DNA of 64,000 bases. Origin: Leucoraja ocellata. Taxonomy: Eukaryota. This document shows positions 18,370-44,803 of the stretch, one piece after another (the first letter of the stretch is position 1; each line of letters starts with the position of its first letter). The stretch covers positions 10,044,001 to 10,108,000 of the forward strand of contig JAWMAR010000028.1 of assembly GCA_036785375.1 (NCBI GenBank), written 5' to 3'. A program made the position numbers and the translations under genes. Under the pieces are notes generated by a model. That model worked only from the letters and a program-made list of their open reading frames with translations, made no database searches and had not been told where the DNA came from.

Positions 18370-18687
18370 CAGGGCTGCCAACATTGGGTGAGAGTTGAGA
18401 GTGAGAAATTGCGAGGGGGCGTAGCGACCGATGGGGGGAAGGTGTGAGGGGGTGTTCCCCTCCCATAGTAGGCTCCGGAGGCGGCACCACTCACCCGCTC
18501 CGCTCCTGGATCCGGGACGGGGTTAAAACTCCATGGGGTGTGGACATAGCGGTCGACGGACATAGAGCCGCCGGAGGTGAGGGTGGGAGGTGTATGCTGT
18601 GCCTCAGGGGGGAATGGGGAGGGGGGTTGGTGCTGGGACCACCGGCGCTGTGTCTCACCTATCACACCATCTGTCCCTTCACATGTT

Positions 18688-20987: not shown

Positions 20988-22299
20988 ACAACCTTTGAAT
21001 CCACCACTGAATTTTGCTGTTGCTGCACCTACCTCTCCTCCCCACCCCCACCTGCATCAATAATCTCTATACTTATAAAACTCTGATCTTGGGTCTTATT
21101 TGTGTGTGTGTTTGTGTGTAATCACATCTTTGCAAAAAAAATCCAGTAGACATATTTCCCCTGGAGTGCAAAATCGCCTTATCTGCAAATTTCATGCTTT
21201 ATTTGTCGAGTAATTAATGAAAATGTTCAAAAATCTGACAAAACATTTAATTTAAAAATGACTGTCTTTCGCTGATGACGTCATAATGGGTCTGCAAGCC
21301 TTTTTCCTTGCGCTGCAAGTGACGTCACCCCCCCAACATTCCCTCCTCCCCCCCGTCATTCAAAAGACGCAGCCGGAGATGAAGTCGGCCCTGGATTGAA
21401 GATCATAGCTGTAGACAGCGGCAGACCAACTTGTGTTCCTTTGGTCGACGCCTGCCCACCCACCCGCTTCCCCGCCCGCCCCGTCACTGCCTCGCCCCCA
21501 CGCTGCGTCGCTCGGCGCAGGGTAGGGAGGTTGCTGCTATTCTCTGCCTCTGTAGCTGCCCTCTCTCTGCCTCTGCCCTCTGTCTCTGCCCTCTGCCCGC
21601 TAGCTCTGTCCTCTGCCCTCAGTCCTCTACCTCCTTCCCTCTGCCCTTGCCCTCTGCCCCTGGCCTCTGTCTCTGCCCCTGCCCTCTCTACACCCCTCCC
21701 TCTCTCTCTCTCTAGCTGCGCCTGCGAGTTGGGGGCTATGAGTGAGTGGATAGGGTGGGGAATTGGGTAAAAGGAGCGAATTCATAATATTAATATAATA
21801 TCAAGGCAGGCCGCCCACCCACCCCCCTCCCCACCCCTGCAACCGCGGATTGAGGGGACGGGACCCAACGAGTCCCACTTGGTCTAGTCTATCTACTTAT
21901 CTATATTACCAAATCTCTGATCTTGACCGCTTTTGGCCCACTGTGCTGCAATTTCCAACAGAACTCCACCACCTACGGCCATCATTTTTGGCCACCTCGC
22001 TCAGAGCCCCCCTCCGCCTGATGGGTGCGGACGATTTTTCCCATCGATGACAAATCAGAGAGATATTATTATTTTTTTTAAATCACCATTCTCTCTGCTG
22101 CCCCTGTTGGAGGGAGGGGGAGGGACTTTAAAACCAGGAAGTGGTGTGCCTCACTCAGTCTCTGCAAGATTGATGAAGCCAAGGGTCATGTCTCTCTGAG
22201 CTCTGAATAACACCGAACAAATGTCTACACAACTGTGAGTACCCTTAATGTGGTTTGAAAATGAAAATATGGTTTGTTTGAAGTAAAAAGGCACTGCCT

Positions 22300-24225
22300 G
22301 CAAATGGTTGTTTGGGTACTTTGGCTTGAAGTTGAAAGGCACTAATTACTGCAAATGGTGGCGGGTGATTTGGCTTGAAGTTGAAAGGCACTTCTTACTG
22401 CAAATGGTGGCTTGGGTGCTTTGGCTTGAAGTTGAAAGGCACTACTTACTGCAAATGGTGGCATGAAGTTGAAAGGCACTACTTACTGCAAATGGTGGCT
22501 TGGGTGCTTTAGCTTGAAGTTGAAAGGCACTACTTACAGCAAATGGTGGCTTGGGATCTTTGGCTTGAAGTTGAAAGGCACTACTTACTGCAAATGGTGG
22601 CTTGGGAGCATTGGCTTGAAGTTGAAAGGCACTACTTACTGCAAATAGTGGCTTGGGATCTTTGGCTTGAAGTTGAAAGGCACTACTTACTGCAAATGGT
22701 GGCTTGGGTGTTTTGGCTTGAAGTTGAATTACACTATTTACTGCAAATTGTGGCTTGGGAGCTTTGGTTTAAAGTTGAAAGGCACTACTTACTGCAAATG
22801 GTGGCTTGGGAGCTTTGGCTTGAAGTTTAAAAACATCACCATTCTCTCCGCTTCACCTGCTGGAATGGAGGGGGAGGGACTATAAAACCAGGAAGTGGTG
22901 TGCCTCAATCAGTCTCTGCAAGATGGATGAAGCCAATGGTCACGTCTCTATGAGCTCTGAATAACACTGAACAAATGTCTACACAACTGTGAGTACCCTT
23001 AATGTGGTTTGAAAATTAAAATATGGTTTGTTTGAAGTAAAAAGGCACTGCCTGCAAATGGTTGCTTGGGTGTTTGGCTTGAAATTGAAAGGCACTTCTT
23101 ACTGCAAAAGGTGGCTTGGGTGCTTTGGCTTGAAGTTGAATTGCACTATTTACTGCAAATGGTGGCCTGGGAGCTTTGGTTTAAAGTTGAAAGGCACGAC
23201 TTACTGCAAATGGTGGCTTGGGAGCTTTGGCTTGAAGGTGAAAGGCACTACTTACTGCAAATGATGGCTTGGGTGTTTTGGCTTGAAGTTGAAAGGCACA
23301 TCTTACTGCAAATGGTGGCTTGGGTGCTTTGGCTTGAAGTTGAAAGGCACTACTTACTGAAAATGGTGGCATGAAGTTGAAAGGCACTACACTGCAAATG
23401 GTGGCTTGGGTGCTTTGGCTTGAAGTTGAAAGGCACTACTTACTGCAAATGGTGGCTTGGGTGCTTTGGCTTTAAGTTGAAAGGCACTACTTACTGCAAA
23501 TGGTGGCTTGGGAGCTTTGGCTTGAAGTTTAAAAAAATCACCATTCTCTCTGCTGCACCTGCTGGAGGGAGGGTGGGGGGACTATAAAACCAGGAAGTGG
23601 TGTGCCTCACAGTCTCTGCAAGATGGATGAAGCCAAGGGTCATGTCTCTATGAGCTCTGAATAACACCGAACAAATGTCTACACGACTGTGTACCCTTAA
23701 TGTGGTTTGAAAATGAAAATATGGTTTGTTTGAAGTAAAAAGGCACTGCCTGCAAATGGTTGTTTGGGTGCTTTGACTTGAAGTTGAAAGGCACTATTTA
23801 CTGCAAATGATGGCTTGGGTGATTTGGTTTGAAGTTGAAAGGCACTTCTTACTGCAAATGGTGGCTTGGATGCTTTGGCTTGAAGTTGATAGGCCCTACT
23901 TACTGCAAATGGTGGCATGCAGTTGAAATGAACTACTTAATGCAAATGGTGGCTTGGGTGCTTTGGCTTGAAGTTGAAATGCACTATTTACTGCAAATGG
24001 TGGCTTGGGTGCTTTGGCTTGAAGTTGAAAGGCACCACTTACTGCAAATGGTGGCATGAAGTTGAAAGGCACTACTTACTGCAAATGGTGGCATGAAGTT
24101 GAAAGGTACTACTTACTGCAAATGGTGGCTTGGGTGCTTTGGCTTGAAGTTGAAAGGCACTACTTACTGCAAATGGCAGCTTGGGTGCTTTGGCTTGAAG
24201 TTAAAAGGCACGACTGCAAATGCAC
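22300..24225. repeat. 51-bp tandem repeats nested in roughly 700-750-bp higher-order units inside Helitron-like unit 2
   Basis: Unit TTTGGCTTGAAGTTGAAAGGCACTACTTACTGCAAATGGTGGCTTGGGTGC; headers recur at about 22081, 22831 and 23537. Confidence 0.92.
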
Positions 24226-26949
24226 TTACTTCCTGTTTGCACTGTATATTGATTTTAGATAAAACGCTACCACTTATGGCTGTGATTTTTGGCCATCTTA
24301 CTCAGTCCCCCCTCTGCTGTGCAGGTGCAGATAATGCTGCCCATCAATGAAAAATAAAAGTGTTATTGTTTAAAAAATGTTGAGAATCTCTCCCCTGTCA
24401 ATCCCGCCCTGAAAGCCGCACCTTTTCCGGTGGGAGGGGGAGGGGTTATAAAACCCGGAAGTGTAGGTGTGGCTCAGTCTCTGCATGATGGGGGAGGGAG
24501 AGCTCATGACTGTGAATCAACTGAACACTCTGAATGTCTACTGAACTGTGAGTTTGGTGTTTTGTGTGGTTTTATGGTGGTTCACCCTGCATGAAATGGT
24601 ATGAAGCTGCATTTGAATTTGGTGGCCTTCGACCTTGCTTGAAGTGGTTGGAAACTGCACTTGAATTCGGTGGCCTTGCACCCTGCTCATAGTGATAAGA
24701 AACTGCACGAATTTGGTGGCCTTGCACCCTGCTTGAAATGGTAGGAACGTGTATTTGAATTTGGTGGCCTTGTATCCTGCTTGAAATGGAATTTCAAGGA
24801 ATAGTCATGAGTCAACTGCCAGCCCACCAGCCGTGCATGAGCTGCCAGCAGATCAGGCTTGAGGGACTGAGCTGCCACCCCAAGAACCCATACCGGCACT
24901 CCAGAAAGCCCCCCCCCACTGCCACCAATATTGGAATTGGTGGAGAGGTGGAATATTGCGTCGGGGGACCAGCCCTCCCGTGTGAACATGGGTCCCAACG
25001 GGTCCCACTTAGTCTAGTCTATATTACTAAATCTCTGATCTTGACAGCTTTTGGCCGACTGTGCTGCGATTTCCAAGATTCCAATTGTTTGCTTCGCCTT
25101 TAAAAAAAGTTTATGTTCACAAAATGGATATTGGTTGTCAGGTGGCTGCAGCCCAATTGTTTGCCTCGCCTTTTTTTTAACAAGTTTGTGTTCGCTAGGA
25201 TTTTTTCGCCATCTTACTCGCCGTTCTCCCCTGCTCCAAGTGCATCAAGGTTTGGTCCATTTAAGATAGAACTGCAGATGCTGGAAAATCGAAGGTAGAC
25301 AAAATGCTGGAGAAACTCAGCGGGTGAGGCAGCATCTATGGAGAGAAGGAAATAGGCGATCTTGGGTCTCAACACGAAATGTCACCTATTTCCTTCGCTC
25401 CATAGATGCTGCCTCATCCACTGAGTTTCTCCAGTATTTTTGTCCTCCCAAGTTTTGTTCTGATCGGTGGAATATTACAAACTTTAAAAAATCATGAGAT
25501 CAGCAGATTGGTCTTCACGGTTGTCAGTCACCATGAAGGTAACACCCCTACTGGCTCCCCCGTCAATCACCGGCTCCTTCAGGAGCGGAATGTGGGCTGT
25601 GTGTTCTCGGGCGGGGGCTGGCCTGTGTTAGTGGGTGGGGGCTGTGAACACAACAGGCGCTGGGGACAGGAGCTTCTGAGTTAGTCCGAATTCGGGTCCT
25701 GGAGCAGGTGAGTGCAGTCGGAGCCGGGGTAGGGAACCGCTGAGCCCACACCCCCCCTCCTCCACACACCTCTCCCCCACACCCCCCCTCCCCCACACAC
25801 ACCCCATCCCCCACACCCCCCCCCCCACCAGCCCCCAATAGGCCCCGCCTGAAGCTGGCCCCCTCCCCTGGCTACAGGACGCTCCCTGCCTGAAGCCGTC
25901 CCCATCCCCCAGCTACAGAACGCTCCCGCCATTGCATTGAGGGAACAGGTGAGTGGTGGAATATTGCATTGGGGAATGGGTTACGTTGGGGGACCAGGCC
26001 TCCCGTGTGACTGGGACCCAACTGATCTCGCTTAGTCTAGTCTATATTACTAAAAGTCTGACCTTGACCAATACCTGTTATTCTGTATATTGATTTTAGA
26101 AAAAAACGCTGCCACTTACGACTGTGATTTCAGGCCATCTTACTCAGAGTCCCCCTCTGCTGTGCAGGACAAGAGGATTTTCCCCATCAATGAAAAATAA
26201 AAGAGTTATTAGTGTTTAAAAAATGTTGAGATTCTCTCTCCTGAAGGCCAAGCCCCTTCCAGAGGGACTATAAAACCCGGAAGTGTTGAGTGCCTCAGTC
26301 AGTCTCTGCAAGATGGGGGAGCGAGAGGGTCATGTCTCTCAGTCTGAACTGTGAATAACACTGAACACATGTACTATAAACTGTGAGTTTGGTTTTACGG
26401 ACCTTGAGTGCCCTTAATGTGGTTTGAAAATGAAAATGTGGTTGGTTCGAAATAAAGCACTGCAAATGGTTGTTGGTGGTGGTTGGTTCAAAATAATGCA
26501 CTGTAAATGGTTGTTGGTGGTGGTTAGTTCGAAATGGCAAATGATTAAAAGTCTAAACATGACAACTTCCTGTTTGTATTGTATATTGTATTTAAATAAA
26601 ATGCTACACTTACGGCTGTGATTTTTGGCCATCTTACTCAGTCCCCCACTGCTCAGGTGCAGAGGATTCTTCCCATCAATGAAAAATAAAAGTTTTATTA
26701 GTGTTTAAAAAATTTTGAGAATCTCTCTCCTGTCAATCACGACATGAAGGCCATGCCCCTTCCGGTGGGAGCGGGGAGGGATTATAAAACCCAGAAGTGT
26801 GGGTGTGGCACAGTCTCTGCAAGATGGGGGAGGGAGAAGACTTGACTGTCTGAGCTGTGAATCAACTGAACTGTGAGTGTCTACTGAACTGTGAGTGTGG
26901 TTTTTATGTGGTGTTTTGTGTGGTTTAATGGTGGTTTTATGGTGGTTTC

Positions 26950-27575
26950 CCCCTGCTTGAAATGGTGCGAAACTGCATTTAAATTGGGTGGCCTTGCGCT
27001 TTGCATGAAATGGTAGGAAACTGCACTTGAATTTGGTGGCCTTGCACCCTGCTTGAAATTGCATGAAACAGCACTAGCATTTGGTGGCCTTGCACCCTGC
27101 TTGAAGTGGCATGAAACTGCGCTTGAATTTGGTGGCCTTGCGCCCTGCTTGAAGTGGTATGAAACTGCACTTGAATATGGTGGCCTTGCACCCTGCTTGA
27201 AGTGGTCGGAAACTGCACTTGAATTTTTGGCACCCTGCTTGAAATGACATGAAACCGCACTTGAATTTGGTGGCCTTGCACCCTGCTTGAAGTGGTCGGA
27301 AACTACATTTGAATTTGGTGGCCCTGCACCATGCTTGAAGTGGTACGAAATTGCACATGAATTTGGTGGCCTTGCACCCTGCTTGAAGTGGTATTAAACT
27401 ACATTTGAATTTGGTGGCCCTGCACCCTGCTTGAAGTGGTCGGAAACTGCATTTGAATTTGGTGGCCTTGCACCCTGCTTGAAGTGGTATTAAACTGCAT
27501 GAGTTTGGTGGACTTGGACCCTGCATGAAGTGGTATGAAACTGCACTTGAATTTGGTGGCCTTGCACCCTGCTTG
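26950..27575. repeat. 48-bp tandem repeat inside Helitron-like unit 4 (shorter array at about 24585-24790)
   Basis: Unit TTGAATTTGGTGGCCTTGCACCCTGCTTGAAGTGGTATGAAACTGCAC. Confidence 0.92.
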
Positions 27576-28187
27576 GCATGGAATTTCAAGGAATAGCCGT
27601 GAGTCAACTGCCAGCCCACCAGCCGTGAGTGAGCTGCCAGCACATCAGGCTTTAGTGACTGAGCTGCCACACCAATAATCCATTTGGCCCCCAATGTCCC
27701 TACTAGCCCCCTAGAAACCAGTCCCTTCAGCCCACAACACCCATACTAGCATTCCAGAACCCCCCCCAAACGGGTCCAACTTGGGCTAGTACCCTATAAA
27801 GATAGGCCTCATAAAAACTGGAGGTAAATTCCGACTGTGAAAGGTTGCACAATGCCTGTTGCTGCACAGTAACATCAAATCTGGAATTAAAGTCGAACAA
27901 AATGCTTGTATCAAATTCCACACGCAGATTACTTGAATTTGCTTATTAATTCCCATGTGATATTGAGTTCCTCTCATCCACTCACCTCACCAATCTGTTG
28001 TAGAATCTAAATTCGGACCTTACTCAAGTTTTGTACAGAGATGAAATTAAAATATATATTTTACGCTGAGTAATTGTTAACAAAAAAAACCCCTTCAATG
28101 ACAGAAAATAACAGGTATAAATGTAAAATAAAACAACAACTTCATTTATTCCTGAGTCTCCCATAACTCTTTACCTATTTTGACATT

Positions 28188-28690: not shown

Positions 28691-28691
28691 T

Positions 28692-28826
28692 GGTGTATTT
28701 TTCAAGGATTGTAAAGCTGTTGTTACTGAAGGACAGCACATTTTCACTGTTGTTCACTACTTTCTTCCAGGTGAAATTGGCTGAGGGGATGTTATGAATG
28801 GTGCAGCCAATGGTGACCTTTTCTCG
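28692..28826 (-). pseudogene. Remnant of the frameshifted Ig exon in copy B
   Basis: EKVTIGCTIHNIPSANFTWKK...NNSFTILEKYT; homologous to about 9567-9700; both ends lost. Confidence 0.85.
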
Positions 28827-29070
28827 CCATATATAATAATCACCATGACTTGTCAGCTCAAGTTTCTGTTCAAGGAATTAGTCACAAAAAGCTAGAAAGT
28901 CTCTCCAGTCCTGTGCCAAAGGATGGCAGCAGTTAGTTACACTTTCACATACGTTGTTAAATTAAAACCCCCTCTAGTTGACATAAACGATTCTGCAACA
29001 CAATTCTAAATTTAAAGTGCCAGAGTTCTGCCCAGTTTATTCCTGCATCCTGGTCAATATTTATCACTAA

Positions 29071-29928
29071 AGGGAAGGGGGGTTCCCCTCTTCTATTATA
29101 GATGAGGCTCTCACCAGGATCCCTTCTATACCATGCAACTCTGCTCTCACTCCCCATCCCTCCACTCGCAACAAGGGCAGAGTCCATCCACCTTGTCCTC
29201 ACCTTCCACCCAACCAGCCGTCACATACAACAAATAATCTTCCAACATTTTCGCCACCTCCAATGGGATCCCACCACTGCCCATATCTTCCCATCTCCTC
29301 CCCTGTCTGCTTTCCGCAGAGCCCGCTCCCTCCATATCTCCCTGGTCCATTCGTCCCTTCCCCATCCAAACCCCCCCTCTCCTGACACTTTCCCTTGCAA
29401 CCACAGGAAATGCTACACTTGTCGCTTTACCTCCACCCATGACTCCACTCAAGGACCCAAGCAGCCTTTCCAGGAGCGGCAGAGGTTCACCTGCACCTCC
29501 TCCAACCTCATCTATTGCATCCGCTGCTCTAGATGCCAGCTGCTTTACATCGGTGAGACCAAGCGTAGGCTTGGCGATCTCTTCGCCCAACACCTCCGCT
29601 CGGTCCGCATTAACCAACCTGATCTCCCGGTAGCTCAGCACTCCCATTCCAAATCCATCCTTTCTGTCCTGGGCCTCCTCCATGGTCAGAGTGAGGCCCA
29701 TCCCAGTGGTTTGAACATTGACTTCTCCAATTTTAGAAAGGCCCTGCTTTCTCCTCCCCTTCCCAGCTCTTCCTCAGCCCACTGTCTCCGCCTTTTCCTC
29801 AGCCCATTGTCTCAATTTTCTTCCTCCTCCCCCATGTCTGAAGAAGGGTCTCGACCCAAAATGTTGCCTATTTCCTTCGCTCCATGGATGCTGCCTCACC
29901 CACTGAGTTTCTCCAGTATTTTTGTCTA
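29071..29928 (+). mobile_element. Penelope-like element fragment (GIY-YIG)
   Basis: ORF 29102-29935 contains NLIYCIRCSRCQLLYIGETKRRLGD; terminal CTGAAGAAGGGTCTCGACCC motif. Confidence 0.88.
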
Positions 29929-29934
29929 TCTCTG

Positions 29935-30031
29935 ACAGGGGGGTTGGAGTGGTTTGTGCAGCTGAACGTGACACGGGCTCCATCCTTCACTTCGGAGGGG
30001 GTGATGGAGACAACGGTGTCCCTGGGGCTAT
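29935..30031 (-). pseudogene. Truncated, diverged D7-like exon remnant in copy B
   Basis: SPRDTVVSITPSEVKDGARVTFSCTNHSNPP, cut by the Penelope element; acceptor context lost. Confidence 0.85.
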
Positions 30032-30339
30032 CTCCCACGCGAGCGCAGCTACCTCCCAGCCTCAACTACCTCCTCTAGCAGCTTGTTCCATACACCCACC
30101 ACCCTTGCTGTGAAAAAGTTACCCCTCAGATTACTCTTAAATCTTTTCCCCTTCACCTTCAACCTTTGTTCCCTGGTCCTTGATTCACCTACTCTGGGCA
30201 AGAGACTCTGTGCATCTACCCGATCTATACATCCCGTGTTGTCTATTAATGATTGTTACAACCATAGATTATTGCAATTTATAATGATTCAGTTCCTGTT
30301 TATTTCCCATTAATTTCCACACATACTCATATATTCATA

Positions 30340-31020
30340 CTTACTTTATGAGCCAAGTATATATTGTAACATACGAGGAATTTTGATTTGCCATACAGTT
30401 ATACAACTAAAAAGCAATAAAAAACACAAAATACATTTTAGCATAAACATCCAGCACAGTGACTCCTCCACATTCCTCACTGTGATGGAAAGCAAAAAAA
30501 AGTTCGATCTCTTCCCTTCTTTGATCTCCAACAGTCAGGTGTCTTTCACCTTCCGTTGACGGGACGATCTTGACTCCCGTAGCCGGCAGCGGGCCCTATG
30601 TGTTGGGGCGATCAAGCTCCTACGTCGGGAGATGTCAGTTCCCCGCGCCGGGCGATCGGACCCCGGGTCGGGGCTAGTCGAACATCGTGTGGTTTTAGAG
30701 CTTCCCGGCTTGGTCTCTCCCGAGGCTGCAAGCCCTTGATGTTAAAGTCCACAGGCTGTGGATTGGAGCATCGATCCCAGGCAAAGGATCAGCTCCGATG
30801 GCAAGTCCACGCCTCCAGCTCCACGATGTTAGGCCGCAGAGTGACCAGAGATACGACCCGGAAAACAATCGCATCTCCAGCAAGATAAGTGATTTCCCCC
30901 GACCCCACTCCCCACATAAACAAACCAGAGAACATTAACACAAATTTTTAAATAATAATAGAAATAACAAAAAAAAGACAAAAGGGGAGACTGTTGGCGA
31001 AGCTGCCATCGCGGCACCAT
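30340..31020 (-). mobile_element. Unclassified interspersed repeat that supplies the candidate C-terminus of copy B
   Basis: Absent downstream of the D7-like exons in copies A and C; GC-rich body and LINE-like 3' end; family not identified. Confidence 0.5.
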
Positions 31021-31134
31021 CCGATATCGAACATTGAACCTGAAGTTTGTTGCTGTTGATCTGCTGGGTTGTGCAGTTGAATGTGACCCCGTCTCCTTCC
31101 TTCACATCGGAGAGAGTGGTGTCCCTGGGGCTAC
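30935..31134 (-). CDS. VCAM1: VCAM1-like copy B, candidate terminal exon (internally deleted D7-like exon reading into a hydrophobic, GPI-signal-like tail)
   Basis: Intact acceptor ctctgttctcAG; open in phase 1: GSPRDTTLSDVKEGDGVTFNCTTQQINSNKLQVQCSISDGAAMAASPTVSPFVFFLLFLLLFKNLC*; native donor degraded. Confidence 0.45.
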
Positions 31135-31171
31135 CTGAGAACAGAGGCGTGAGAAATTAATTAATTGCTAA

Positions 31172-32640
31172 AATAGAATATAGAATAGAATAGTTTCTTT
31201 ATTGTCATTGTAACATGAACCATGTACAACGAAATTTACAAATGTCAGCCAGTCAGTGCACCATTCAAACATTTCTAAAAGCTAACGATACATACAAGGT
31301 AAAATGTTAAAAAAAAGATAAACTAAAATAAATATCATGAAAATAGCACGCATAAACACCCAACCCTCCATCCTTCTGTCGATTTCACAGTGTACCACAG
31401 TCCCTTAGTATGTATCGCCCCCTGCGTTCCTTGGCAGCTACATTTAGTAGTGGGGTAAAAACTGTTTTTAAGTCTGTTTGTCCTTGTCCTTGTAGATCTG
31501 TACCGTCTGCCTGACGGCAACAGTTCAAACAGGGAGTGTCCGGGGTGGAAAATGTCCTTTATAATACTCTGATGCAGCGGGAACTGTGCAAGTCCTCCAA
31601 GGTAAGGAGAGGGCAGCTGACAATCCTCTGGGCATTGTCAATGGCCCTCTGGAGCGCTTTCCTCTGAGCCGCTGGTGTACCACGCATACACAGTTTGTTA
31701 GGATGCTCTCAATGGAGCACCGATAAAAGGACAGCAGCAGTCTCTGAGTGATGTTATTCTTCCCGAGCACCCTCAGGAAGTGCAGTCTCTGCTGGACCTT
31801 TTTCAGCAGCGCAGAGGTGTTCACGCTCCACGTCAGGTCCTCCTCAATATGAATTCCCAGGAAGCGGAAATCCACCACCCTCGCCACACAGTCCCCTCTG
31901 ATAATCAATGGTACCATGTCCGTTTTATTCTTCCTGAAGTCTATTATTATTTCCTTTGTCTTTAAGGTGTTGAGGAGCAGGTTATTTTCTCCACACCACA
32001 CTGTCAGCTGCTCCGCCTCATCCTGGTAGGCGTACTCGTCCCCCCCGGAGATGAGTCCCACCACCGTAGTGTCATCCGCAAATTTGACAATGTTGTTGCT
32101 GTGGTGGGCTGGGGTGCAGTCATGTGTGTAGATGGTGTAGAGCAGGGGGCTCAGCACGCAGCCCTGTGGAGAGCCGGTACTGAGGCTGAGGGCCGTGGAT
32201 GTATGATGGCCCACTCTGACTCTCTGGCTGCGACCCGACAGGAAGCTATTTATCCACATGCAGGTGGAGTGTGGAAGTCCCAAGTCCCCCAGTTTGTCCA
32301 CCAGTTTGTGGGGAAGGATGGTATTAAAAGCAGAGCTGTAGTCCACAAAGAGCATCCGCACGTAGCTCCCCCGCTGCTCCAGGTGAGACAGTGCAGCATG
32401 GAGAGCTGTGGCTACAGCGTCCTCTGTAGATCTATTTGCTCTGTACGCAAACTGGTGGGGGTCAAAGCTTCGGGGCAGAAGTGATGTGATATGACCCCGG
32501 ACCAGTTTTTCATTACACTTCATCACCACTGGTGTGAGTGCAACTGGCCGGTAGTCGTTGAGGCTGGAAATGTGGGTTTTTTTGGGCAAGGGGACTATGG
32601 TTGCGGACTTCAGACAGGGTGGAACAGGTTTAGCCAAAAC
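31172..32640 (-). mobile_element. Rex1/Babar-type non-LTR retrotransposon, 5'-truncated
   Basis: RT: [46 protein letters not shown]; C-terminus PSGRRYRS...RLKNSFYP; (TTCTA)n tail. Confidence 0.88.
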
Positions 32641-32776
32641 AGTGCGAAGAAACATAGTCATACTCATAAAGTGATACATTGTTGAAACAGGCCCTTCAGT
32701 CCAACCTGCCATCATGTCCCAGCTACACTAGTCCATGTCTCTCCAAATCTGTCCTACCCATGCACCTGTCTAATAA

Positions 32777-33037
32777 AGGGCCTGTCCCACTGATGCGACC
32801 TTTCAGCAACTGTTTTCGACCTTCAAGCTCGAGGGCACTCGCCTGAAAAACCTCGAGCTGGATCGACCGTCAACGATAAAACCGCGAGCTGGATCGACTG
32901 ACCGCACACATACATAAACACATCGCAAAGGTGGGGGCCAGGAAAGCGGGGGAGCGCGGTCTGAAATTCACACCCGTGATGAACAGGAAGGTAAAAGACG
33001 GTTGCACAGTGTACGGTAAGTCTTTTAGGGAGCGCGG

Positions 33038-33068
<31 letters not shown>

Positions 33069-33463
33069 TGGGGGGAGAGAAGTGGGGGGAGAAACTTTTA
33101 AGAATCTAGACAACTTATAATAAAGTTTAACATTACCGTTGGTTTTTTTGGTCCTGAAAACTCCAATAAGCCAATTAAAATGCCCGGTCAGCGAAGGAGA
33201 TTGCCTACGGCTGCCCTCGACTGCCTGTAACTACATAGCAACCCCACTCCACTACGAGTTCAAAAGAATCATGCCGACCAATTTTTACATGCGGAAAATT
33301 TCTCAACATGCTGAAACATTTTCCTCAACCTAATTGAGGCTGCGAGTATGCAGGAACTTCTCTCGAGAATCTCAAGGAGAGTTCCAGTGACATCATAGGA
33401 CCTCCTAGGACAACGTGTCAACCATGCTGCACGTTTGAGTTGAGGGCAAACTCTTCTAGAACT
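32777..33463. mobile_element. Harbinger-like MITE, partial
   Basis: Begins AAGGGCCTGTCCCACT; right end replaced by an L1 fragment. Confidence 0.5.
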
Positions 33464-34570
33464 CAAGTAGAATGGAATTATATGATTAAAGTATTGCAAA
33501 AATTTCAAATGGGAGAGAACTTCATCGCATGGATAAAATTATTATATAACAAACCCACGGCTAGAATATTAACTAATAATATACTATCTACGAAATTCCA
33601 ATTATCAAGGGGCAATAGACAAGGATGTTCATTATCACCGCTGTTATTTGCTCTGGTAATTGAACCTCTAGCTGAAAAAAATCAGAACACACCCGGATAT
33701 TTACGGTTATACTACAAAATATTCAAATAACAAAATATCTTTATACGCAGACGATGTACTACTGTATATCACAAAACCCCAAATGAGTATACCAAACATA
33801 TTAAATCAAATTGAGGACTTTGGATCTTTCTCAGGATACAGAATAAACTGAAACAAAAGTGAAATTATGTCGATAAAACCGAAAGACTCAACGCTGCTCT
33901 TGAAATTCCCCTTTAAAATAGCCACAGAAAAATTCAAATATTTAGGAATTGAAGTTACTAGAAACTATCACGCTATGTTTAACGCCAATTATAGCCCCTT
34001 ACTTAAGAAACTAAATAATCTAATCAAATTCTGGAAAACGCACCTGATGTCTTTAATAGGTCGAATAAATGCTATAAAAATGATCTTTTTACCACAAATC
34101 CTATATTTATTTCAATCAATACCTATATATCTTCCAAAAAAGTTTTTCAAAAAATTAGACTCAGACATTACAAATTTTATATGGGATTATAAATGCCACA
34201 GAATACAAAGAGCACACCTTAGTAAACCAAAAGAGATGGGTGGTCTAGCGATCCCTAACTTCATGTACTATAATTGGGCAGTAAATATTAAAAATATGAT
34301 TCACCTGCTGGACAATTCTGCCCAGCAGGTGGACTGGATTGTAATGGAGAGAGAGGACTGCTCTCTGTGTAATATAGGAGCGACTCTCCTCTCACCAATT
34401 AATCTGAATAACAAAAATTATAATAAAAATCTAATGATACATAGCACAATTAGAACTTGGAAACAAATAAAACAGAATCTAAAATTAAGAAATCTATCTC
34501 TTTTAATGCCAATAGTCAATAACCCATCATTTAAACCTTCAATTATAGATAAATCATTTACACAATGGGT
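33464..34570 (+). mobile_element. L1/Tx1 ORF2 internal fragment
   Basis: LSRGNRQGCSLSPLLFALVIEPLA, SLYADD, RINAIKMIFLPQILYLFQ; frameshift and stop present. Confidence 0.9.
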
Positions 34571-34680
34571 GTAAATGAGCCCTGGTGACATCCTGGTAAA
34601 TCTTCTCTCAACCCTTTCCAGCTTGACCACGTCTTTCCTATAACAATGATAGTAAAATTACAATAGTGAAACAAACACAC

Positions 34681-34947
34681 CTTGAACGTGGATTTCCACC
34701 TCCTTGGTGATTGTCCCCAGTTTATTGCCAGCTTCACAGCGGTACATTCCCGTGTCCCCGAACAGGGCCGGTGACAGGTGCAGAATCGCTCGGTCCTCGG
34801 CCACGACTGACCAGTTGCCGGCGGATAACTTGCTCCACACTATCGTGGCAGCGGGGCTGCTGTCTGCAGCACAGGTTAGCCGAACATCCTGACCCTCTCT
34901 CACTGTGGCAGAGGGCTCTGCAGTAATGTCAATCCCCGTGGGAGCAT
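34681..34947 (-). CDS. VCAM1: VCAM1-like copy B exon 4, Ig D3
   Basis: 267 bp, AG/GT intact, near-identical to copy A. Confidence 0.85.
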
Positions 34948-35065
34948 CTGTAGAAAGAGATGGGATAATTCACTACATTAAAGGCGGGCGACTTAAACCA
35001 TTGTCCAGACTACGTCTATGACTGTGATTCCGTTCTCAATGTTATATCTCTGTCTCCATACTTAC

Positions 35066-35368
35066 AGTGAACCTGTAACGTTAGCGACCCCTCGGCCTTG
35101 CGTGGTTGGTTCCCCGTGAGTAATTGCACTCGGCATGTCAGCTCTTGTCCCGAGTCTCGCAATTCAGCCGTCAGTTCGTAGGTGAAGTTCATCGCCGTTT
35201 CTTCCTCTGTGTAGTCACGGAAGCTGTCGGTCTTCAGCAATGTTGTTCCTTTCAGCCACTCCACCTCCACTTGAGCGGGGTAGACTTTGGGGACCGTACA
35301 TCTCACGGAGCCTCTCTGGCCAACTTCCAGGCTGCCCACAGTCTCCACGATGAGCGTGTCGGACAGAG
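35066..35368 (-). CDS. VCAM1: VCAM1-like copy B exon 3, Ig D2
   Basis: 303 bp, strong polypyrimidine acceptor, GTAAGT donor. Confidence 0.85.
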
Positions 35369-36453
35369 CTGCAACACAGAGAAAACAGAAGGAAAACTGC
35401 TCTCTTCAGACGCTGCGCTATAACGAGTGAAATCCCCCCAGAACAATGACCTTTCAGTGGAACAGCAGATGCTGGTTTAAACCGAAGATAGACACAAAAA
35501 GCTGGAGTAACTCAGCAGGACAGGTAGTATCTCTGAGAAAGAAGGAACGCAGGGCTGGGCTGGGCTGGCCTTAAGCCGATCAGACCGATTGCTGCCAATT
35601 GGGCCGAGCCCCGACGGGGGCAGCGCTGGAATCATCCAAAGCTCCGCTCTATGATCTTTGGAGAAATCTACTCTCGGCTCGGGTAGATCTACCCCGGGTG
35701 GAGGGAGGAGAGAGGGGTGGAGGGAGAGTAGAGGGATGGAGGGGGAAGAAAGGGAGAAGGGGAGGGGGGTGTGAGGGGAATGAAGAAGGGGAGGGTCGTT
35801 CCATCACGGTCCCGGGATAGCACTCCCGCCCCTCCACTCGCCGTGCTTCATGCACACATCCCCGCCTCCACCCCTCTCTCTCCCCGGGGACACGTGGTGA
35901 ACAATACAGGGCCGGGCCGGGGGTTGGAGCAATGTTTACAAACCTCGGCCTCAGCTCACACCCATCCGCCCAGACCCCAGCATCCGCTCATGCCGCCTCC
36001 CTCCCTTCTTTTCTTCGCTTCCTCCCTTCTCTCCTTCCTTCCCTTTCCTTTCTCTCCGCTCCATCCCTTCTTTCTCTCCTTCCCTCCATCCTTTGTCTAC
36101 TTCCCTCCCTGCCTTCTGTCCTTCCTCCCTTCTCTCCTTCCCTCCCACACACACACATAACGCACAGACAACTAACACACACACACACACAACTAAGTTA
36201 GGATGGGGTAGAAGCCCAAAGGGTAGGATGGGGCTGAACCCCACAATTTAATGCCTGGACTGGTTTTTCACGAATTGGTTTTCCAGGATCTATTTAATTA
36301 AATTACTTTTTTTTTTCATTTCACTGCCACTAAAACAAGTGGTATTGTAACGATGTACTTTTCAGAGGTGATCTACACATTTTGTTTGTTACTTGTAGGC
36401 TGGCCGGACAAAGTTGCAACAAGTTTACAGTCGGGAGATGGGTTAATACTCAC

Positions 36454-36729
36454 AGAATATATTGAGGTTGGCATATGTTCGTTTTTCTTCTGTGCCGCAT
36501 TTTGCGGAACAAGTGTACTTGTGTTGGTTCTGCGGGGTAACCGCGGAGATGGTGAATGTGGACACCGAGCCCCGAGTTGTGATTGTTCCGCCCAGGGGGT
36601 TATCGGTCCCGATTCTCCACGTGAAGGTTGGAGACGAGCAGCTCTTCGCCACACAGATCAACTGCAGCGAGTCCCCGATACGAGCCCACACGTTTCTAGA
36701 CGGGTTTAACTCCAACTTGAAGGCGGATC
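36454..36729 (-). CDS. VCAM1: VCAM1-like copy B exon 2, Ig D1
   Basis: 276 bp, open, TDNPL motif and four Cys intact. Confidence 0.87.
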
Positions 36730-36917: not shown

Positions 36918-36978
36918 CTGTGGCGAGCATCAATGCAAGAGTAATTGTAGCGGCTGGGTCGCATCTGTCTCCAGCCAT
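36918..36978 (-). CDS. VCAM1: VCAM1-like copy B exon 1, signal peptide
   Basis: MAGDRCDPAATITLALMLAT(G), phase-1 donor. Confidence 0.82.
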
Positions 36979-37019: not shown

Positions 37020-37195
37020 GTTGACTTCACTTCTTCAAGGGGCGTCAGGCTCTGGAGCTGTGAGCCTGGGCTCCGCCGCCCCGCTTTATAACCCTGTCTG
37101 GAAGAGCAGGGAACTTCCCTTGGCTTCAGGCGAACAATCCCCACCACGCACCGTTCACTGGCTCCTGGTCTTTCTCTGCTGAAGGGAATTTACCA
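37020..37195 (-). promoter_or_regulatory. Copy B promoter (TATA, NF-kB)
   Basis: TATAAA 37090-37085; GGGAACTTCCC 37109-37119; GGGAATTTACC near 37184. Confidence 0.68.
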
Positions 37196-38582: not shown

Positions 38583-41500
38583 AGGTAGGTTTGCCACTGC
38601 TACACCGGTGGTTTTAAACTGAATAAGGGGATGGGGTGTCAAATGGGATAGTCGAGGATGGAGTTAAAGGGAAAGCGAGTAAAGGGATGGTTAATGACCT
38701 CAATATTAACAGGAAAGGAAGCTCACAAAGGGATAGGAGAGTATGGACAAGTGTAATAGAGATCGATGTGAAAGGTGAGATGTGTAAGGAATTAAAAGTA
38801 TTGTATATGAATGCGCAAAGTATAAGAAGTAAAGTAGATGAGCTTGAGACTCAGTTAGAAGTTGGTAGATATGACATTATAGAAACATAGAAACATAGAA
38901 ATTGGGTGCAGGAGTAGGCCATTCAGCCCTTCGACGTCTCAGTAATCCCCATTATGGGGATTACTGAGACGTGGTTGCAGGAGAATCAGCCTGGGAACTT
39001 AATATTCAGGGTTATACATCCTATAGAAAGGACAGGCAGGTGGTCAGAGAAGGGGGGGTAGCTCTGCTGGTGAGGGAGGGAATTCAGTCTGTTGCGAGGG
39101 AAGACATAGGGACTGATGAGGTAGGGTCACTGTAGATTGAGTTGAGGAATTGTAAAGGCAAGAAGACACTAATTGGTGTTATTTCAGACCCCCAAATAGT
39201 AGCCCGGATGTAGGGTGTAAGTTGCAGCAGGAGTTAAAACTGGCATGTAACAAAGGTAATGCCACTGTGGTGATGGGGGATTTCAATATGCAGGTACACT
39301 GGGAAAATCAGGTTGGTTCAGGACCCCAAGAAAGAGAGTTTGTCGAATGCCTCCGAGATGGATTCTTCGAGCAGCTTTTAATGCAGCCGACCAGAGAAAA
39401 GGCAATTCGGGATTTAGTGTTGTCCAATGAACCAGATATGATAAGAGAACTCGAGGAAAAGGAACCGCTTGGAGGTAGTGATCATAATATGATTAGTTTT
39501 AATCTGAAATTTGAGAAGGAGAATGTTAAATCGGAAGTGGCAGTGATGCAGTTCAACAAAGGAGACTATGAAGGCATGAGAGGGAAGCTGGCCAAAGTAG
39601 ACTGGAAAGGGATCCTAGCAGGAATGACGGTGGAACAGCAATGGCAGGAATTTCTGGGCATAATCCGGAAGACGCAGGAGCATTTCATTCCATAAAGGAA
39701 GAAAGATTCTTTTTTTTTTTTTTTTTTTTAATTTTTTTATTATTGGAGATAGGTACATAATCTATTACATCATTACTGTCTTACATTTTTAAATTGATAA
39801 TATTGTCAGTTATTATTACATTGTCTCCAATACTTTTTGCATTTTTCTTCGTTTTTTTTATAACTAGATAGAGCTAAAGGGATAGATGAAATAGAGAGAG
39901 GGAAGAAGGAGAAAGAAAACTAAAATTAAAAAAAAAGGAAGAGGAGTGAAAGAGGTAATTGAAGAAGAATGGAAAAATTTGTTAGAGTTTAAAAACATCA
40001 TTCGAGATATGTTCGTACATTTCGAAGTATAGCATTTCATCCAATCTTTAGTCCGGGTGCTAGTCAGGTTCCTGTGCTGAACTATTCTGACCCTTTAAAT
40101 AATCAATAAAAGGAGACCATGTTCCAACGAATAATTCCTGTTTGTCCAACAGGGAAAATCTGATTCTTTCCACGTTTAAGGTCTCCGTCATTTCTATAAT
40201 CCACATTTTGATTGTAGGGCCTTTCCAAAATTTTAGGATTAATTTTTTTCCTGTTATTAAACTGTAATCGATAAAGTTTCTTTGTGTTATTCTAAGTGTT
40301 TGATTTAATTCTAATATTCCGAGTATTATTAATTTTGAGTTTGGTTCCAGTTGTGTGTTGGTTACTTTGGATATTATACTAAAAATATTTACCCAAAAAT
40401 TTTTAATTTTTGTACAGTTTGTAAACATGTGCGATAACGTAGCTTCTAAATGTTGACATTTATCACATATAGGTGAGATATGTTGAAAAATGTTATGTAA
40501 TTTTGTTTTGGCGTAATGTAACCTATGTATTACTTTAAATTGTATTAGAGAGTGTCTTGCGTTTAGTGAACACTGATGTATGTGTTGTAAACTTTCTTCC
40601 CAAGTGTCTTTCGTTATTACCTGATTTAATTCTTTTTCCCATGCTTGTCTGTGAAAGTCCGTCAAAGGAATGTCACTGTCTAATAAGATATTATATATAT
40701 AAGATATTAATTTTTCTGTATTAGGATGCTTATTCCAACATTCATCAAGAATCTCTGGGTTTCTATTTCGAAAATTTTTAGAATTCGATTTAACATAATC
40801 TCTAAGTTGAAGATATCTGAAATAATCATTTCCTCGAAGTCCATAAGTCTGTTGCAACTCCTGAAATGTCAAAAAAGAGCCTTCCTTGTAAAGGTGTCCC
40901 ATATTTTTAATTCCATAATTCTTCCATTGTGTAAAACCCCCGTCTAAACATGAAGGCTTAAACAATGAATTATTCACAATTGGAAGAAAAAGAGATAAGT
41001 TATCTAATTTTAATGTCTTTTTTAATTGTTTCCAAATTTTTATAGCACTAAATATTATAGGGTTTTCCCTGTAAATTTTCTTGTTTAATTTAGACGTAGC
41101 AAATAATATCGAACCAATATCATAAGGCATACAATCTTCCTTTTCCATTTTTAACCAGTCCGGTTGCTGGTCTATTTCTCCCAACCAGAAGTTCATATTT
41201 TTAATATTAACTGCCCAGAAATAAAACAAAAAGTTAGGTAAAACCAAGCCTCCATTATTTTTTGATTTACACAGGTGTCTTTTGCTTATCCTATGATTCT
41301 TATAATCCCAGATAAAATCATTAACAATAGAGTCCAATTTTTTAAAGAAGTTTTTTGCCAGGTATATCGGAATCGTCTGAAAAAGGTATAATATTTGCGG
41401 TAAAAAAATCATTTTTATGGCATTAATTTTGCCAACCATTGAAATAGGTAATGTTTTCCAGTATTGGATATTCTTATGTAATTTATTCAATAATGGGGGG

Positions 41501-42112: not shown

Positions 42113-42177
42113 GGGCCAAAGATATAAGCAATGTTCCAGGTTTGTTGTTGCACACAGCAGGATTTATTAATAGTTTT

Positions 42178-42356
42178 GGGTGGCACAGTGGCACAGCGGT
42201 AGAGTTACTGCCTGACAACACCCGAGACCCAGGTTCAATTCTGATTACTGGTGCTGTCCGTATGGAGTTTGTACATTCTCCCTGATTTCTGTGTTGGTTT
42301 CTCTGGGTGCTTCAGTTCCCTCCCACACTCCAAAGACGTGCAAGTTTTGTAGCTTA
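42178..42356 (+). mobile_element. tRNA-derived SINE (HE1/V-SINE-like), truncated
   Basis: A box TGGCACAGCGG, B box GGTTCAATTC, core GGAGTTTGTACATTCTCCC. Confidence 0.75.
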
Positions 42357-44792: not shown

Positions 44793-44803
44793 TTACTGAA
44801 ATA

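What the first reader, a model, noticed from the sequence alone, without database searches (positions are those of the whole stretch)
30935..31134. Copy B may be a 3-Ig GPI-anchored VCAM1 with a repeat-derived anchor signal
Seen: B lacks the TM exon. Its first D7-like exon keeps a good acceptor, has two frame-preserving deletions (264 to about 102 bp) and a degraded donor, and reads on into the neighbouring repeat as ...QVQCSISDGAAMAASPTVSPFVFFLLFLLLFKNLC*. That is small residues (SDGAA), a polar spacer and a terminal hydrophobic run, the layout of a GPI signal. Known: mouse makes a GPI-anchored VCAM-1 isoform of D1-D3 by alternative splicing. This would be a convergent version made by duplication and exonisation. 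Caveat: T-rich DNA yields F/L runs by chance, and B may be a pseudogene.
Basis: inference. Interest (0 to 1): 0.82.

Follow-up and report, generated by a model that had tools for sequence, protein, structure and literature searches.

The report
Expressed three-Ig skate VCAM1 copy, GPI-like tail
One of three tandem VCAM1-like genes in this skate-type genome has lost its membrane-spanning end but is still transcribed and spliced into an mRNA for a 368-residue, three-Ig-domain protein whose new tail, read from inserted DNA, looks like a lipid (GPI) anchor signal, as in a known mouse VCAM-1 isoform.

Summary
Copy B (minus strand) has intact exon 1, D1, D2 and D3. Its next exon is cut from 264 to 102 bp by in-frame deletions of 12 and 150 bp. 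Its donor is spoiled (AAG|GTTTGT to AAT|GTTCGA), and a ~0.7-kb insertion sits exactly at that boundary. The frame reads 35 codons into the insertion. There is no TM exon.

The predicted mRNA exists. One raw RNA read and two spliced contigs show the 34681>31134 junction. Other contigs run unspliced past 31033 and past the stop. Public transcript assemblies hold ORFs that reproduce the model: P0160 is 368 aa, and P0168/P0169 equal the window's B allele over D2, D3 and the tail.

An Amblyraja radiata gene model carries the same deleted exon plus the first five insertion codons, so the structure is old.

The tail fits textbook GPI-signal rules. Anchoring itself is untested. One variant (P0175) has a shortened tail, and some transcripts keep intron sequence upstream of D2. 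"Repeat-derived" is not shown for the coding part of the insertion.

Verdict: a real, expressed, truncated paralogue. GPI anchoring is plausible, at about even odds. It is a new variant of a known kind.

The parts
36918..36978 (-). Copy B exon 1, coding part. The ATG is at 36978. It encodes the signal peptide MAGDRCDPAATITLALMLAT(G). The donor is CAG|GTTTCT.
   Evidence: The same N-terminus is found in Amblyraja and Leucoraja VCAM1-like proteins P0157 and P0173.
36454..36729 (-). Copy B D1 exon (276 nt), the VCAM1 domain 1.
   Evidence: Phmmer against human VCAM-1 D1-D2 structures 1ij9/1vsc/1vca gives E 1.4e-17. Tblastn with Pristis VCAM1 gives E 1.8e-29.
35066..35368 (-). Copy B D2 exon (303 nt).
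   Evidence: The joint 34947>35066 (skips 118, CT..AC) is seen in X22 (4 reads), X23 (1 read), an X1 contig and an X16 contig.
34681..34947 (-). Copy B D3 exon (267 nt).
31033..31134 (-). Remnant of the first D7-like exon (102 nt, from 264 nt, after in-frame deletions of 12 and 150 nt). The acceptor AG is at 31136-31135.
   Evidence: The joint 31132>34679 (cut +2, so 31134/34681; CT..AC is GT..AG on the minus strand) is.
30938..31032 (-). Read-through coding part inside the insertion (the last base of one codon plus 31 codons, ...CSISDGAAMAASPTVSPFVFFLLFLLLFKNLC). This is the GPI-signal-like tail. The stop TAA is at 30935-30937.
   Evidence: X1 record 2 (30849-31136) and X16 record 11 (30918-31136, 0 other letters) run straight through it.
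30327..31029 (.). Insertion of about 0.7 kb at the exon/donor boundary, of unknown kind. It supplies the tail and most of the 3' UTR.
   Evidence: The flanks match the exon end and the intron start of intact copies. No tRNA, Rfam, terminal-repeat or target-duplication signal was found.
31016..31018 (-). Cryptic donor GATG|GTGCCG, 15 nt into the insertion. The Amblyraja radiata model XP_032885015.1 is spliced at the matching place (...CSISD|AEKDQEPVNG).
30299..30304 (-). AATAAA, 631 nt after the stop. All seven intact copies have AATTTA at this spot.
   Evidence: Contigs with non-ORF sequence of at least about 500 nt (P0169: 235 aa on a 1221-nt contig) fit a long 3' UTR.
29850..30041 (-). Second D7-like exon fragment of copy B. 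The polypyrimidine tract is lost, the fragment is truncated, and a stop follows. It is dead.
28691..28877 (-). Partial last-Ig-like exon of copy B. Homology to A and C ends at 28691.

Best explanation
Copy B is a transcribed, correctly spliced, 3'-truncated paralogue in a tandem cluster of VCAM1-like genes of a skate (family Rajidae by its closest proteins). Its mRNA joins exon 1, D1, D2, D3 and a 102-nt remnant of the next Ig exon. A ~0.7-kb insertion separated that remnant from its donor, so the RNA is not spliced there. It runs into the insertion, reaches a stop after 35 more codons, and probably ends near an AATAAA 631 nt further on. The product is a 368-residue protein with four parts. 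First comes a signal peptide. Then come three Ig domains, including the integrin-binding-type D1. Then comes a stalk of about 40 residues that cannot fold as an Ig domain. Last comes a C-terminus with small residues (S-D-G-A-A), a spacer of 8-12 residues, and an 11-14-residue F/L-rich run followed by only KNLC. The most likely fate is cleavage at one of the small residues and attachment of a GPI anchor. That would give a lipid-anchored three-Ig VCAM1-like molecule. What is shown: the gene anatomy, the transcription, the splice junction, the read-through, the ORF, and the age of the exon-plus-insertion structure. What is inferred: translation, GPI processing and function.
For: The joint 31132>34679 (canonical on the minus strand) appears in 1 raw read of X22 with 33 letters on its shorter side. 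Only the first 26 nt of the exon are shared with A and C, so this read is B-specific. The same joint appears in one contig each of X1 and X16, with 21 letters on the shorter side. X1 record 2 (290 nt, depth 30.3) and X16 record 11 (224 nt, depth 256, 0 other letters) cover the exon, the spoiled donor and the stop. Each stops 2 unaligned letters beyond 31136, which is what a k=31 contig of a spliced RNA should do (inference). In the raw runs, depth over 30850-31049 is about 3.1 in X22 and 1.7 in X23. Depth over D3 (34650-34849) is similar, at 2.3 and 2.1. P0160 (368 aa, 1225-nt Logan contig) runs from Met to the tail. P0168 (on 3 contigs) and P0169 are identical to window B over D2, D3 and the tail. 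P0162 and P0170 are further variants with the identical tail. On age: Amblyraja XP_032885015.1 contains ...TTQQTNSTKLQVQCSISD, which carries the 150-nt deletion and the first 5 insertion codons. D1-D3 of B are open, and pN/pS against A and C is 0.26 and 0.56 on 20 and 19 differences. On GPI likeness: the tail passes a rule requiring omega in SNDGAC, omega+2 in GAS, a spacer, and at least 10 uncharged residues of mean Kyte-Doolittle 2.5 or more ending within 5 residues of the C-terminus. 8 of 1029 window ORF tails and 32 of 20000 shuffles pass. The published layout is a spacer of 8-12 residues and a hydrophobic region of 8-20 residues (passage of PMC12410294). AlphaFold2 on the single sequence P0160 gives coil for 342-352 and a helix for 353-367, but the model is poor (mean pLDDT 55).
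Against: No protein-level data exist, and no trained GPI predictor was available. My rule is home-made and its sensitivity on real GPI proteins was not tested. The hydrophobic run is short (11 strictly hydrophobic residues) and is followed by a lysine. Variant P0175 (360 aa, full length) ends ...SPTVCPFVFLNIF and fails the rule, so the tail is not kept in every copy or species. The T-rich tract gives a rule-passing tail in 2 of its 3 frames, so given the insertion the layout is cheap to get by chance. X1 record 7 runs 52 nt into the B-specific intron upstream of D2 and has 68 more letters beyond the stretch. The P0162, P0168 and P0170 ORFs start at a GTG inside D2. So part of the RNA keeps, or starts in, that intron and lacks a signal peptide. 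D2 and D3 are 98% identical between copies, so a contig that links exon 1 and D1 to the B tail (P0160, P0175) could be an assembly chimera. The identical tail in three variants is not significant: about 3% divergence elsewhere predicts about 1 change in 35 residues. Junction support in raw reads is a single read in about 5% of one run.
Confidence: 0.5

Rival explanations
1. Copy B is an expressed but decaying partial duplicate, a transcribed pseudogene. Its promoter and first exons are kept alike by gene conversion with A and C. The RNA is made, but the protein is either not made or is destroyed in the ER because the tail is not processed. On this reading the GPI-like look is an accident of a T-rich tract.
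For: The 3' half of B is wreckage: deletions, a dead second exon fragment, a partial last exon, and insertions. The D2-D3 block is 98.3-98.5% identical to A and C including the intron, which fits gene conversion. 2 of 3 frames of the T-run give a rule-passing tail. P0175 has a shortened tail. Some transcripts contain intron sequence. Partial deletion of a GPI signal's hydrophobic region leads to ER-associated degradation in PrP (passage of PMC12410294).
Against: The exon-plus-insertion junction is shared with Amblyraja, yet the ORF through D1-D3, the remnant and the tail is still open in 4 distinct variants. Depth over the tail is similar to depth over D3. An AATAAA is present at 30304-30299 only in B.
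Confidence: 0.3
2. The product is a soluble or secreted three-Ig VCAM1-like decoy rather than an anchored one. The short hydrophobic end would be too weak to hold the chain for the GPI transamidase, or it would be lost as in the P0175-type variant.
For: The P0175 tail ...CPFVFLNIF has no adequate hydrophobic run. In the window's tail the strictly hydrophobic run is only 11 residues and is followed by K.
Against: Three of the four distinct tail-bearing variants keep the full F/L run. An 11-14-residue run is within the published range of 8-20. Uncleaved hydrophobic C-termini are usually retained rather than secreted (established knowledge; the PrP example is).
Confidence: 0.1
3. The tail is mostly bypassed. 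The cryptic donor GATG|GTGCCG (the exon would end at 31018) is spliced to the 27-nt mini-exon upstream of the next copy (16920-16946) and on into copy A. That would give a B-A fusion protein with a TM end, as in the Amblyraja gene model.
For: Amblyraja XP_032885015.1 reads ...QVQCSISD|AEKDQEPVNG|SAFNLELNP. The donor and the mini-exon, with AG and GT flanks, are present in the window upstream of all 3 copies.
Against: The contigs of X1 and X16 and all 6 Logan ORFs carrying a tail read straight through 31018. No joint from about 31018 is among the 15 joints listed, though 22 more were not shown. The Amblyraja protein is an automatic model that fuses several copies.
Confidence: 0.1

Closest known systems
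Mouse GPI-anchored VCAM-1 isoform (Terry et al. 1993 PNAS, cited in PMC2193422; I saw only the introduction passage and reference list of PMC2193422, and PMC46838 itself is not held)
   Same: It has the first three Ig domains of VCAM-1 only, a short non-Ig C-terminal piece, no TM or cytoplasmic part, and membrane attachment by GPI. In mouse this is shown; here it is predicted.
   Different: In mouse it is an alternative splice form of the single VCAM1 gene. Here it is the default product of a separate tandem gene copy. That copy's next exon was truncated, and its signal comes from DNA inserted at the donor. The lineage is a cartilaginous fish, so any likeness is convergent.
Batoid VCAM1 with TM anchor: Pristis pectinata XP_051868251.1 (P0007, 446 aa); Leucoraja erinacea VCAM 1b XP_055497216.1 (P0173, 1602 aa); window copies A and C
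   Same: They share the signal peptide, D1-D3 (50-70% identity to Pristis; 91-98% DNA identity to A and C) and a D7-like exon of the same origin.
   Different: These end in a TM exon and a cytoplasmic tail. B has neither, and only 34 residues of one D7-like domain.
Amblyraja radiata XP_032885015.1 'VCAM1-like' (P0165, 784 aa, automatic model)
   Same: It contains the same exon with the 150-nt deletion and the first five insertion-derived codons (CSISD).
   Different: It keeps the 12 nt (ITPS) that the window's B lacks. The model splices out after CSISD into the next copy and so has no hydrophobic tail. Its genomic DNA could not be read here.

Membership tests
GPI-anchored proteins (C-terminal GPI attachment signal) | N-terminal ER signal peptide | tested here: met
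   Exon 1 is intact and encodes MAGDRCDPAATITLALMLATGSA|F. This is the same leader as in the TM-anchored orthologues P0157 and P0173. No signal-peptide predictor was run.
GPI-anchored proteins (C-terminal GPI attachment signal) | Small omega, omega+1 and omega+2 residues | tested here: met
   The candidates are S-D-G, D-G-A, G-A-A, A-M-A and S-I-S, found by a home-made rule. The preference table behind the rule is recalled knowledge.
GPI-anchored proteins (C-terminal GPI attachment signal) | Spacer of about 8-12 residues, then a hydrophobic region of 8-20 residues reaching (nearly) the C-terminus, with no cytoplasmic domain | tested here: met
   With omega at A, G or D, the spacer is 10-12 residues up to FVFFLLFLLLF (11 residues, or 14 counting VSP), followed by KNLC. 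The ranges come from a passage of PMC12410294. The lysine 4 residues from the end is atypical.
GPI-anchored proteins (C-terminal GPI attachment signal) | Positive call by a trained predictor (NetGPI, PredGPI, big-PI) | not testable with these tools
   No such predictor is on hand.
GPI-anchored proteins (C-terminal GPI attachment signal) | Release by PI-PLC, or a lipid anchor shown chemically | not testable with these tools
   This needs an experiment.
VCAM1 (vascular cell adhesion protein 1) family | D1 of VCAM-1 type with the C-D loop motif (human QIDSPL) | tested here: met
   The match to 1ij9/1vsc/1vca has E 1.4e-17. The aligned motif is GTDNPL against QIDSPL.
VCAM1 (vascular cell adhesion protein 1) family | Closest named proteins are VCAM1 orthologues, with the same domain order D1-D2-D3 | tested here: met
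   18 of the 19 proteins with E<=1e-20 to Pristis VCAM1 either carry a VCAM1 name from a source or are the unnamed Logan B-type ORFs. Tblastn places D1, D2 and D3 in order in all three copies.
VCAM1 (vascular cell adhesion protein 1) family | TM segment and short cytoplasmic tail | tested here: not met
   There is no TM exon in B. So B is a truncated member of the gene family, not a canonical VCAM1.
Mouse-type GPI VCAM-1 (alternative splice isoform) | Made from the same gene as the TM form by use of an alternative exon | tested here: not met
   B is a separate copy with its own promoter region and exon 1, and it has no TM exon to alternate with.

The most novel reading that the evidence does not exclude
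A working GPI-attachment signal was born de novo from non-coding DNA inserted at a splice donor of a duplicated VCAM1 gene. It has been kept in skates since before the Amblyraja-Leucoraja split. This gives cartilaginous fish a constitutively lipid-anchored three-Ig VCAM1, made by a separate gene, that converges on the cytokine-induced GPI isoform which mouse makes by alternative splicing.
Probability: 0.3. Interest if true: 0.75.

Novelty: new variant of a known kind. Interest (0 to 1): 0.6.

Why it matters
If the tail works, this would be a dated and simple example of how a membrane-anchoring signal can arise from inserted non-coding DNA in one step: loss of a donor plus read-through. It would also be a second, independent origin of a three-Ig GPI-anchored VCAM-1. 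That would suggest the short lipid-anchored form has a function of its own, such as a different membrane domain, shedding behaviour or signalling-free adhesion. The function of the mouse isoform has remained unclear. The cDNA already exists in public transcript assemblies, so the test is easy: express it and treat with PI-PLC. If the tail does not work, the locus is still a clean case of an old, expressed, half-destroyed paralogue inside a rapidly expanding VCAM1 cluster.

Tried and rejected
The MAFFT alignment of nine exon copies misplaced the 3' part of B's exon. A pairwise affine-gap alignment and a local blastn resolved it.

My first GPI rule let the hydrophobic run swallow the spacer and returned nothing. 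I tightened it to mean Kyte-Doolittle of at least 2.5. The rule is home-made. No real GPI protein was among the 175 proteins available as a positive control, so only its specificity was checked.

Looking for what the insertion is led nowhere:
- There is no second copy in the window at E<=0.01.
- There is no tRNA-like head.
- The only Rfam matches are two chance ones below their thresholds.
- There are no direct repeats, and only one 12-nt inverted pair.

Searches for more tail-bearing proteins also gave little. P0160 residues 296-368 gave 3 proteins out of 23 candidates, all already known. The 73-aa ORF of the window alone gave 1 candidate, and none scored. Both are limited by the length window of that tool.

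The AlphaFold2 model of P0160 without an alignment is poor (pLDDT 55). I did not run a fold search on it.

pN/pS between copies rests on 17-20 differences and decides nothing. B-specific diagnostic sites in D2 and D3 proved unreliable across individuals, because other B-type variants carry the A/C-type residues. I therefore did not estimate the share of B among all D3-containing RNA.

Literature: no paper in the library holds VCAM, GPI-anchored and exonization together (0 papers). 3 papers hold VCAM and Leucoraja. I read passages in one (PMC10450919), which mentions them in unrelated places; the other two I judged only from their titles. The mixed search ranked by number of terms and is no evidence of absence. 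Subscription papers and supplements were not seen.

Only exon lengths were summed. An exact look-up of the window's own 368-aa model therefore was not done.
Full report
WHAT THE WINDOW IS

The 64-kb window has no N. It holds three tandem copies of a VCAM1-like gene, all on the minus strand.
- Copy C has D1 from 59976 and its TM exon at 49749-49591.
- Copy B has D1 at 36729-36454.
- Copy A has D1 from 16531 and its TM exon at 8827-8666.

The D1 exon of B matches human VCAM-1 D1 in solved structures 1ij9, 1vsc and 1vca at E 1.4e-17.

The closest protein in a 1.84-billion-protein library is Amblyraja radiata XP_032885016.1, at 85% identity over D1. Leucoraja erinacea and Amblyraja VCAM1-like proteins sit in the same 90% clusters as the proteins discussed below. 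So the genome is that of a skate. The run tool codes organism names, and I did not try to decode them.

The simple form is seen in the sawfish Pristis pectinata VCAM1 (P0007, 446 aa): signal peptide, D1, D2, D3, one D7-like domain, TM and tail. Whether that form is ancestral is my inference. Skates have multiplied the D7-like exon: five copies in C and two in A, and 14 in L. erinacea XP_055497216.1.

THE OBSERVATION

B has an intact exon 1 (ATG at 36978, encoding MAGDRCDPAATITLALMLAT, donor CAG|GT). It also has intact D1 (276 nt), D2 (303 nt) and D3 (267 nt), with good splice sites and phase-1 junctions.

The next exon starts at 31134 behind TTCTCAG. It is 102 nt instead of 264. It has lost 12 nt and 150 nt, both multiples of three, and has 8 mismatches in the 102 kept positions.

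The donor AAG|GTTTGT of the intact copies is AAT|GTTCGA in B.

The reading frame goes on for 35 codons to TAA at 30937-30935. The last exon reads SPRDTTLSDVKEGDGVTFNCTTQQINSNKLQVQCSISDGAAMAASPTVSPFVFFLLFLLLFKNLC.

B has no TM exon. The TM part of P0007 hits only copies A and C. The DNA around A's TM exon (8000-9560) matches only copy C. Homology of B to A and C ends at 28691.

Positions 31030-31065 match the last 36 nt of the six intact exons (89% identity). Positions 30287-30326 match the first 40 nt of the intron behind them (85-90% identity). So about 700 bp (30327-31029) was inserted exactly at the exon/donor boundary. The tail is translated from the first ~95 nt of that insertion.

I could not say what the insertion is. 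Only its 30450-30649 part shows the excess depth of a repeat. 'Repeat-derived' is therefore unproven for the part that codes.

IS THE RNA MADE?

Yes. I laid two raw oligo-dT RNA-seq runs (X22 and X23, about 5% of each read) and two contig sets (X1 and X16) on 29450-35420.

The joint 31132>34679 was found. It can be cut two places further on, giving 31134/34681. Its ends CT..AC are GT..AG on the minus strand. It was seen in:
- 1 raw read of X22 and 0 of X23;
- 1 contig of X1 (depth 24.3);
- 1 contig of X16 (depth 602).

The two contigs have only 21 letters on the exon side. The first 26 nt of the exon are the same in A, B and C, so the contigs alone cannot tell the copies apart. The X22 read has 33 letters on its shorter side. 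It must therefore cross B's 12-nt deletion, so it is B-specific.

The read-through evidence is more telling. X1 record 2 (290 nt, depth 30.3, 2 other letters, no gaps) covers 30849-31136. X16 record 11 (224 nt, depth 256, 0 other letters) covers 30918-31136. Both run from the exon straight past the spoiled donor and past the stop.

Both also end with two letters that do not fit the genome just beyond the AG at 31136-31135. A k=31 contig of a spliced RNA should end exactly there, four letters into D3, where it merges with the A and C junction. This last step is my inference, because the letters themselves are not shown.

X1 and X16 hold spliced D2-D3 contigs, so they contain RNA. In the raw runs, depth over 30850-31049 is about 3.1 in X22 and 1.7 in X23. 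Depth over D3 is similar, at 2.3 and 2.1. So B-type RNA is not a trace species there, although the numbers are small.

INDEPENDENT SUPPORT FROM PROTEIN DATABASES

That step was left out. Instead I searched with the sawfish protein P0007 (19 proteins at E<=1e-20 among 8000 scored candidates).

That search brought in unnamed ORFs from public run assemblies (Logan), and the cluster look-up added the rest:
- P0160 is 368 aa on a 1225-nt contig. It runs from MAGDRCDP... through D1, D2, D3 and the shortened exon to ...FVFFLLFLLLFKNLC.
- P0168 (249 aa, seen on 3 contigs) and P0169 (235 aa, on a 1221-nt contig) are identical to the window's B over D2, D3, the remnant and the tail. They share its private residues: G in LLTGNQ, I in VEIHVQ and N in TFNCTT.
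- P0162, and P0170 with P0160, are two further variants with the identical tail.
- P0175 (360 aa) is a full-length variant whose tail is ...SPTVCPFVFLNIF, so most of the hydrophobic run is gone.

That makes four distinct B-type protein variants. All are open through the remnant exon.

AGE

The Amblyraja radiata model XP_032885015.1 (P0165) contains ...GSPRDTTLSITPSDVKEGDGVTFSCTTQQTNSTKLQVQCSISD|AEKDQEPVNG|SAFNLELNP....

It shares the 150-nt deletion. It also shares CSISD, which can only come from the first 15 nt of the insertion, because intact copies read GLCGN* at that place. It still has the 12 nt (ITPS). So the large deletion and the insertion predate the split of the two genera, and the 12-nt deletion is younger.

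The Amblyraja model leaves the exon at a cryptic donor. In the window this donor is GATG|GTGCCG, with the exon ending at 31018. The model then enters a 27-nt mini-exon. That mini-exon lies upstream of exon 1 of all three window copies, with intact AG and GT flanks (60386-60412, 37152-37178 and 16920-16946).

So a B-to-A read-through fusion is structurally possible. In this species, however, both read-through contigs and all six tail-bearing ORFs read through that donor.

WOULD THE TAIL WORK AS A GPI SIGNAL?

By the published layout, a GPI signal has an attachment site, then a spacer of 8-12 residues, then a hydrophobic region of 8-20 residues (passage of PMC12410294).

The tail fits. With omega at D, G or the first A of SDGAA, the spacer is 12, 11 or 10 residues. 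The hydrophobic run is FVFFLLFLLLF (11 residues, or 14 counting VSP). Only KNLC follows.

The tail is too short for a TM helix and there is no cytoplasmic part.

I applied a crude rule of my own, with these results:
- The tail passes.
- 8 of 1029 ORF tails of the window pass. One of these is this tail, and one is a second frame of the same T-run.
- 32 of 20000 shuffles of the downstream DNA pass.

So the layout is uncommon in random sequence, at about 0.2-0.8%. But it is cheap once a T-rich tract lies downstream, since 2 of its 3 frames pass. The rule's sensitivity is untested, and no trained predictor was available.

The lysine near the end and the short run are weak points. The PrP work quoted shows what failure looks like: loss of 7 of 14 hydrophobic residues abolishes anchoring and sends the protein to ER-associated degradation. 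That is the fate I would expect for a P0175-type tail.

The remnant exon keeps only the first cysteine of the Ig domain and cannot fold as one. Together with CSIS it would form a stalk of about 40 residues with two cysteines. The single-sequence AlphaFold2 model is poor (pLDDT 55) and only suggests coil followed by a terminal helix.

POINTS AGAINST A FUNCTIONAL PROTEIN

- X1's B-type D2-D3 contig runs 52 nt into the B-specific intron upstream of D2 and continues for 68 more letters.
- The ORFs of P0162, P0168 and P0170 start at a GTG inside D2, as expected behind an in-frame intron stop. So part of the RNA keeps, or starts in, that intron and has no signal peptide.
- D2-D3 is 98.3-98.5% identical between copies, intron included. 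Gene conversion could therefore keep B's front half open without selection on B. It also means that contigs linking exon 1 and D1 to the tail could be chimeric.
- pN/pS of B against A and C is 0.26 and 0.56, and A against C is 0.36. These rest on 17-20 differences and decide nothing.
- Zero changes in the 35-residue tail among three variants is what about 3% divergence would give in roughly one case out of three.

COMPARISON WITH WHAT IS KNOWN

Mouse makes, by alternative splicing, a cytokine- and LPS-inducible VCAM-1 that has only the first three domains and is held by a GPI anchor. This comes from the introduction of PMC2193422, which cites Terry et al. 1993. The original paper is not held.

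The skate B product would work like that isoform. But it is not made like it. It comes from its own gene copy. It has no TM exon to alternate with. Its signal comes from an insertion at a splice donor.

I found nothing in print on skate VCAM1 copies or on such an origin, within the limits of the library.

VERDICT

GPI anchoring is a reasonable, testable inference at about even odds. The main rival is an old, expressed, decaying paralogue.

I class it as a new variant of a known kind, of moderate to good interest. The cDNA exists, and one simple experiment decides the question.

Noticed in passing
window 37152-37178, 16920-16946, 60386-60412 (minus strand): A 27-nt phase-preserving mini-exon (AEKDQEPVN) with AG and GT flanks lies about 170 nt upstream of the ATG of each of the three copies. 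The Amblyraja model XP_032885015.1 uses it to chain one copy to the next, so read-through fusion transcripts between tandem copies may exist.
   Followed up: partly
window 35369-35420 and upstream (minus strand): B's intron upstream of D2 is rearranged next to the acceptor: homology to A and C breaks at 35376-35378. A spliced B-type RNA contig (X1 record 7) and the ORFs P0162, P0168 and P0170 indicate RNA that keeps, or starts in, this intron. This could be an internal start site or intron retention.
   Followed up: partly
window 30299-30304 (minus strand): B has AATAAA where all seven intact D7-like introns have AATTTA. This may be a gained poly(A) signal, 631 nt after the new stop.
   Followed up: partly
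window 9402-9786 and 8907-9478 (minus strand): In copy A the last Ig-like exon is split over two reading frames, with a stop after ...FTIHEKYTK. A also carries about 570 bp more than C between that exon and the TM exon.
   Followed up: no
window 52321-52566 (minus strand): The fourth D7-like exon of copy C loses homology after ...DAGWYQ and runs into other DNA, so it is a broken repeat unit inside the otherwise regular array.
   Followed up: no
window 22150-24100, 24540-24800 and 26880-27750: Long arrays of short tandem units, open in several frames (for example ...APKPPFAVSSAFQLQAK... and ...GARPPNSSAVS.HFKQ...), fill much of the space between copy B and copy A. Another array lies at 18370-19120 and a similar one at 44580-45360.
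   Followed up: no
window 31528-32727 and 40063-42204 (minus strand): There are long open reading frames that look like reverse transcriptases (400 and 714 aa; no family search was run on them). The first lies inside the D3-to-remnant intron of B. Many RNA reads with 1-5% mismatches land there.
   Followed up: no
P0175 (Logan ORF, 360 aa): This is a full-length B-type variant with A/C-like D1 residues and a shortened tail (...SPTVCPFVFLNIF). Its source species or copy is unknown.
   Followed up: partly
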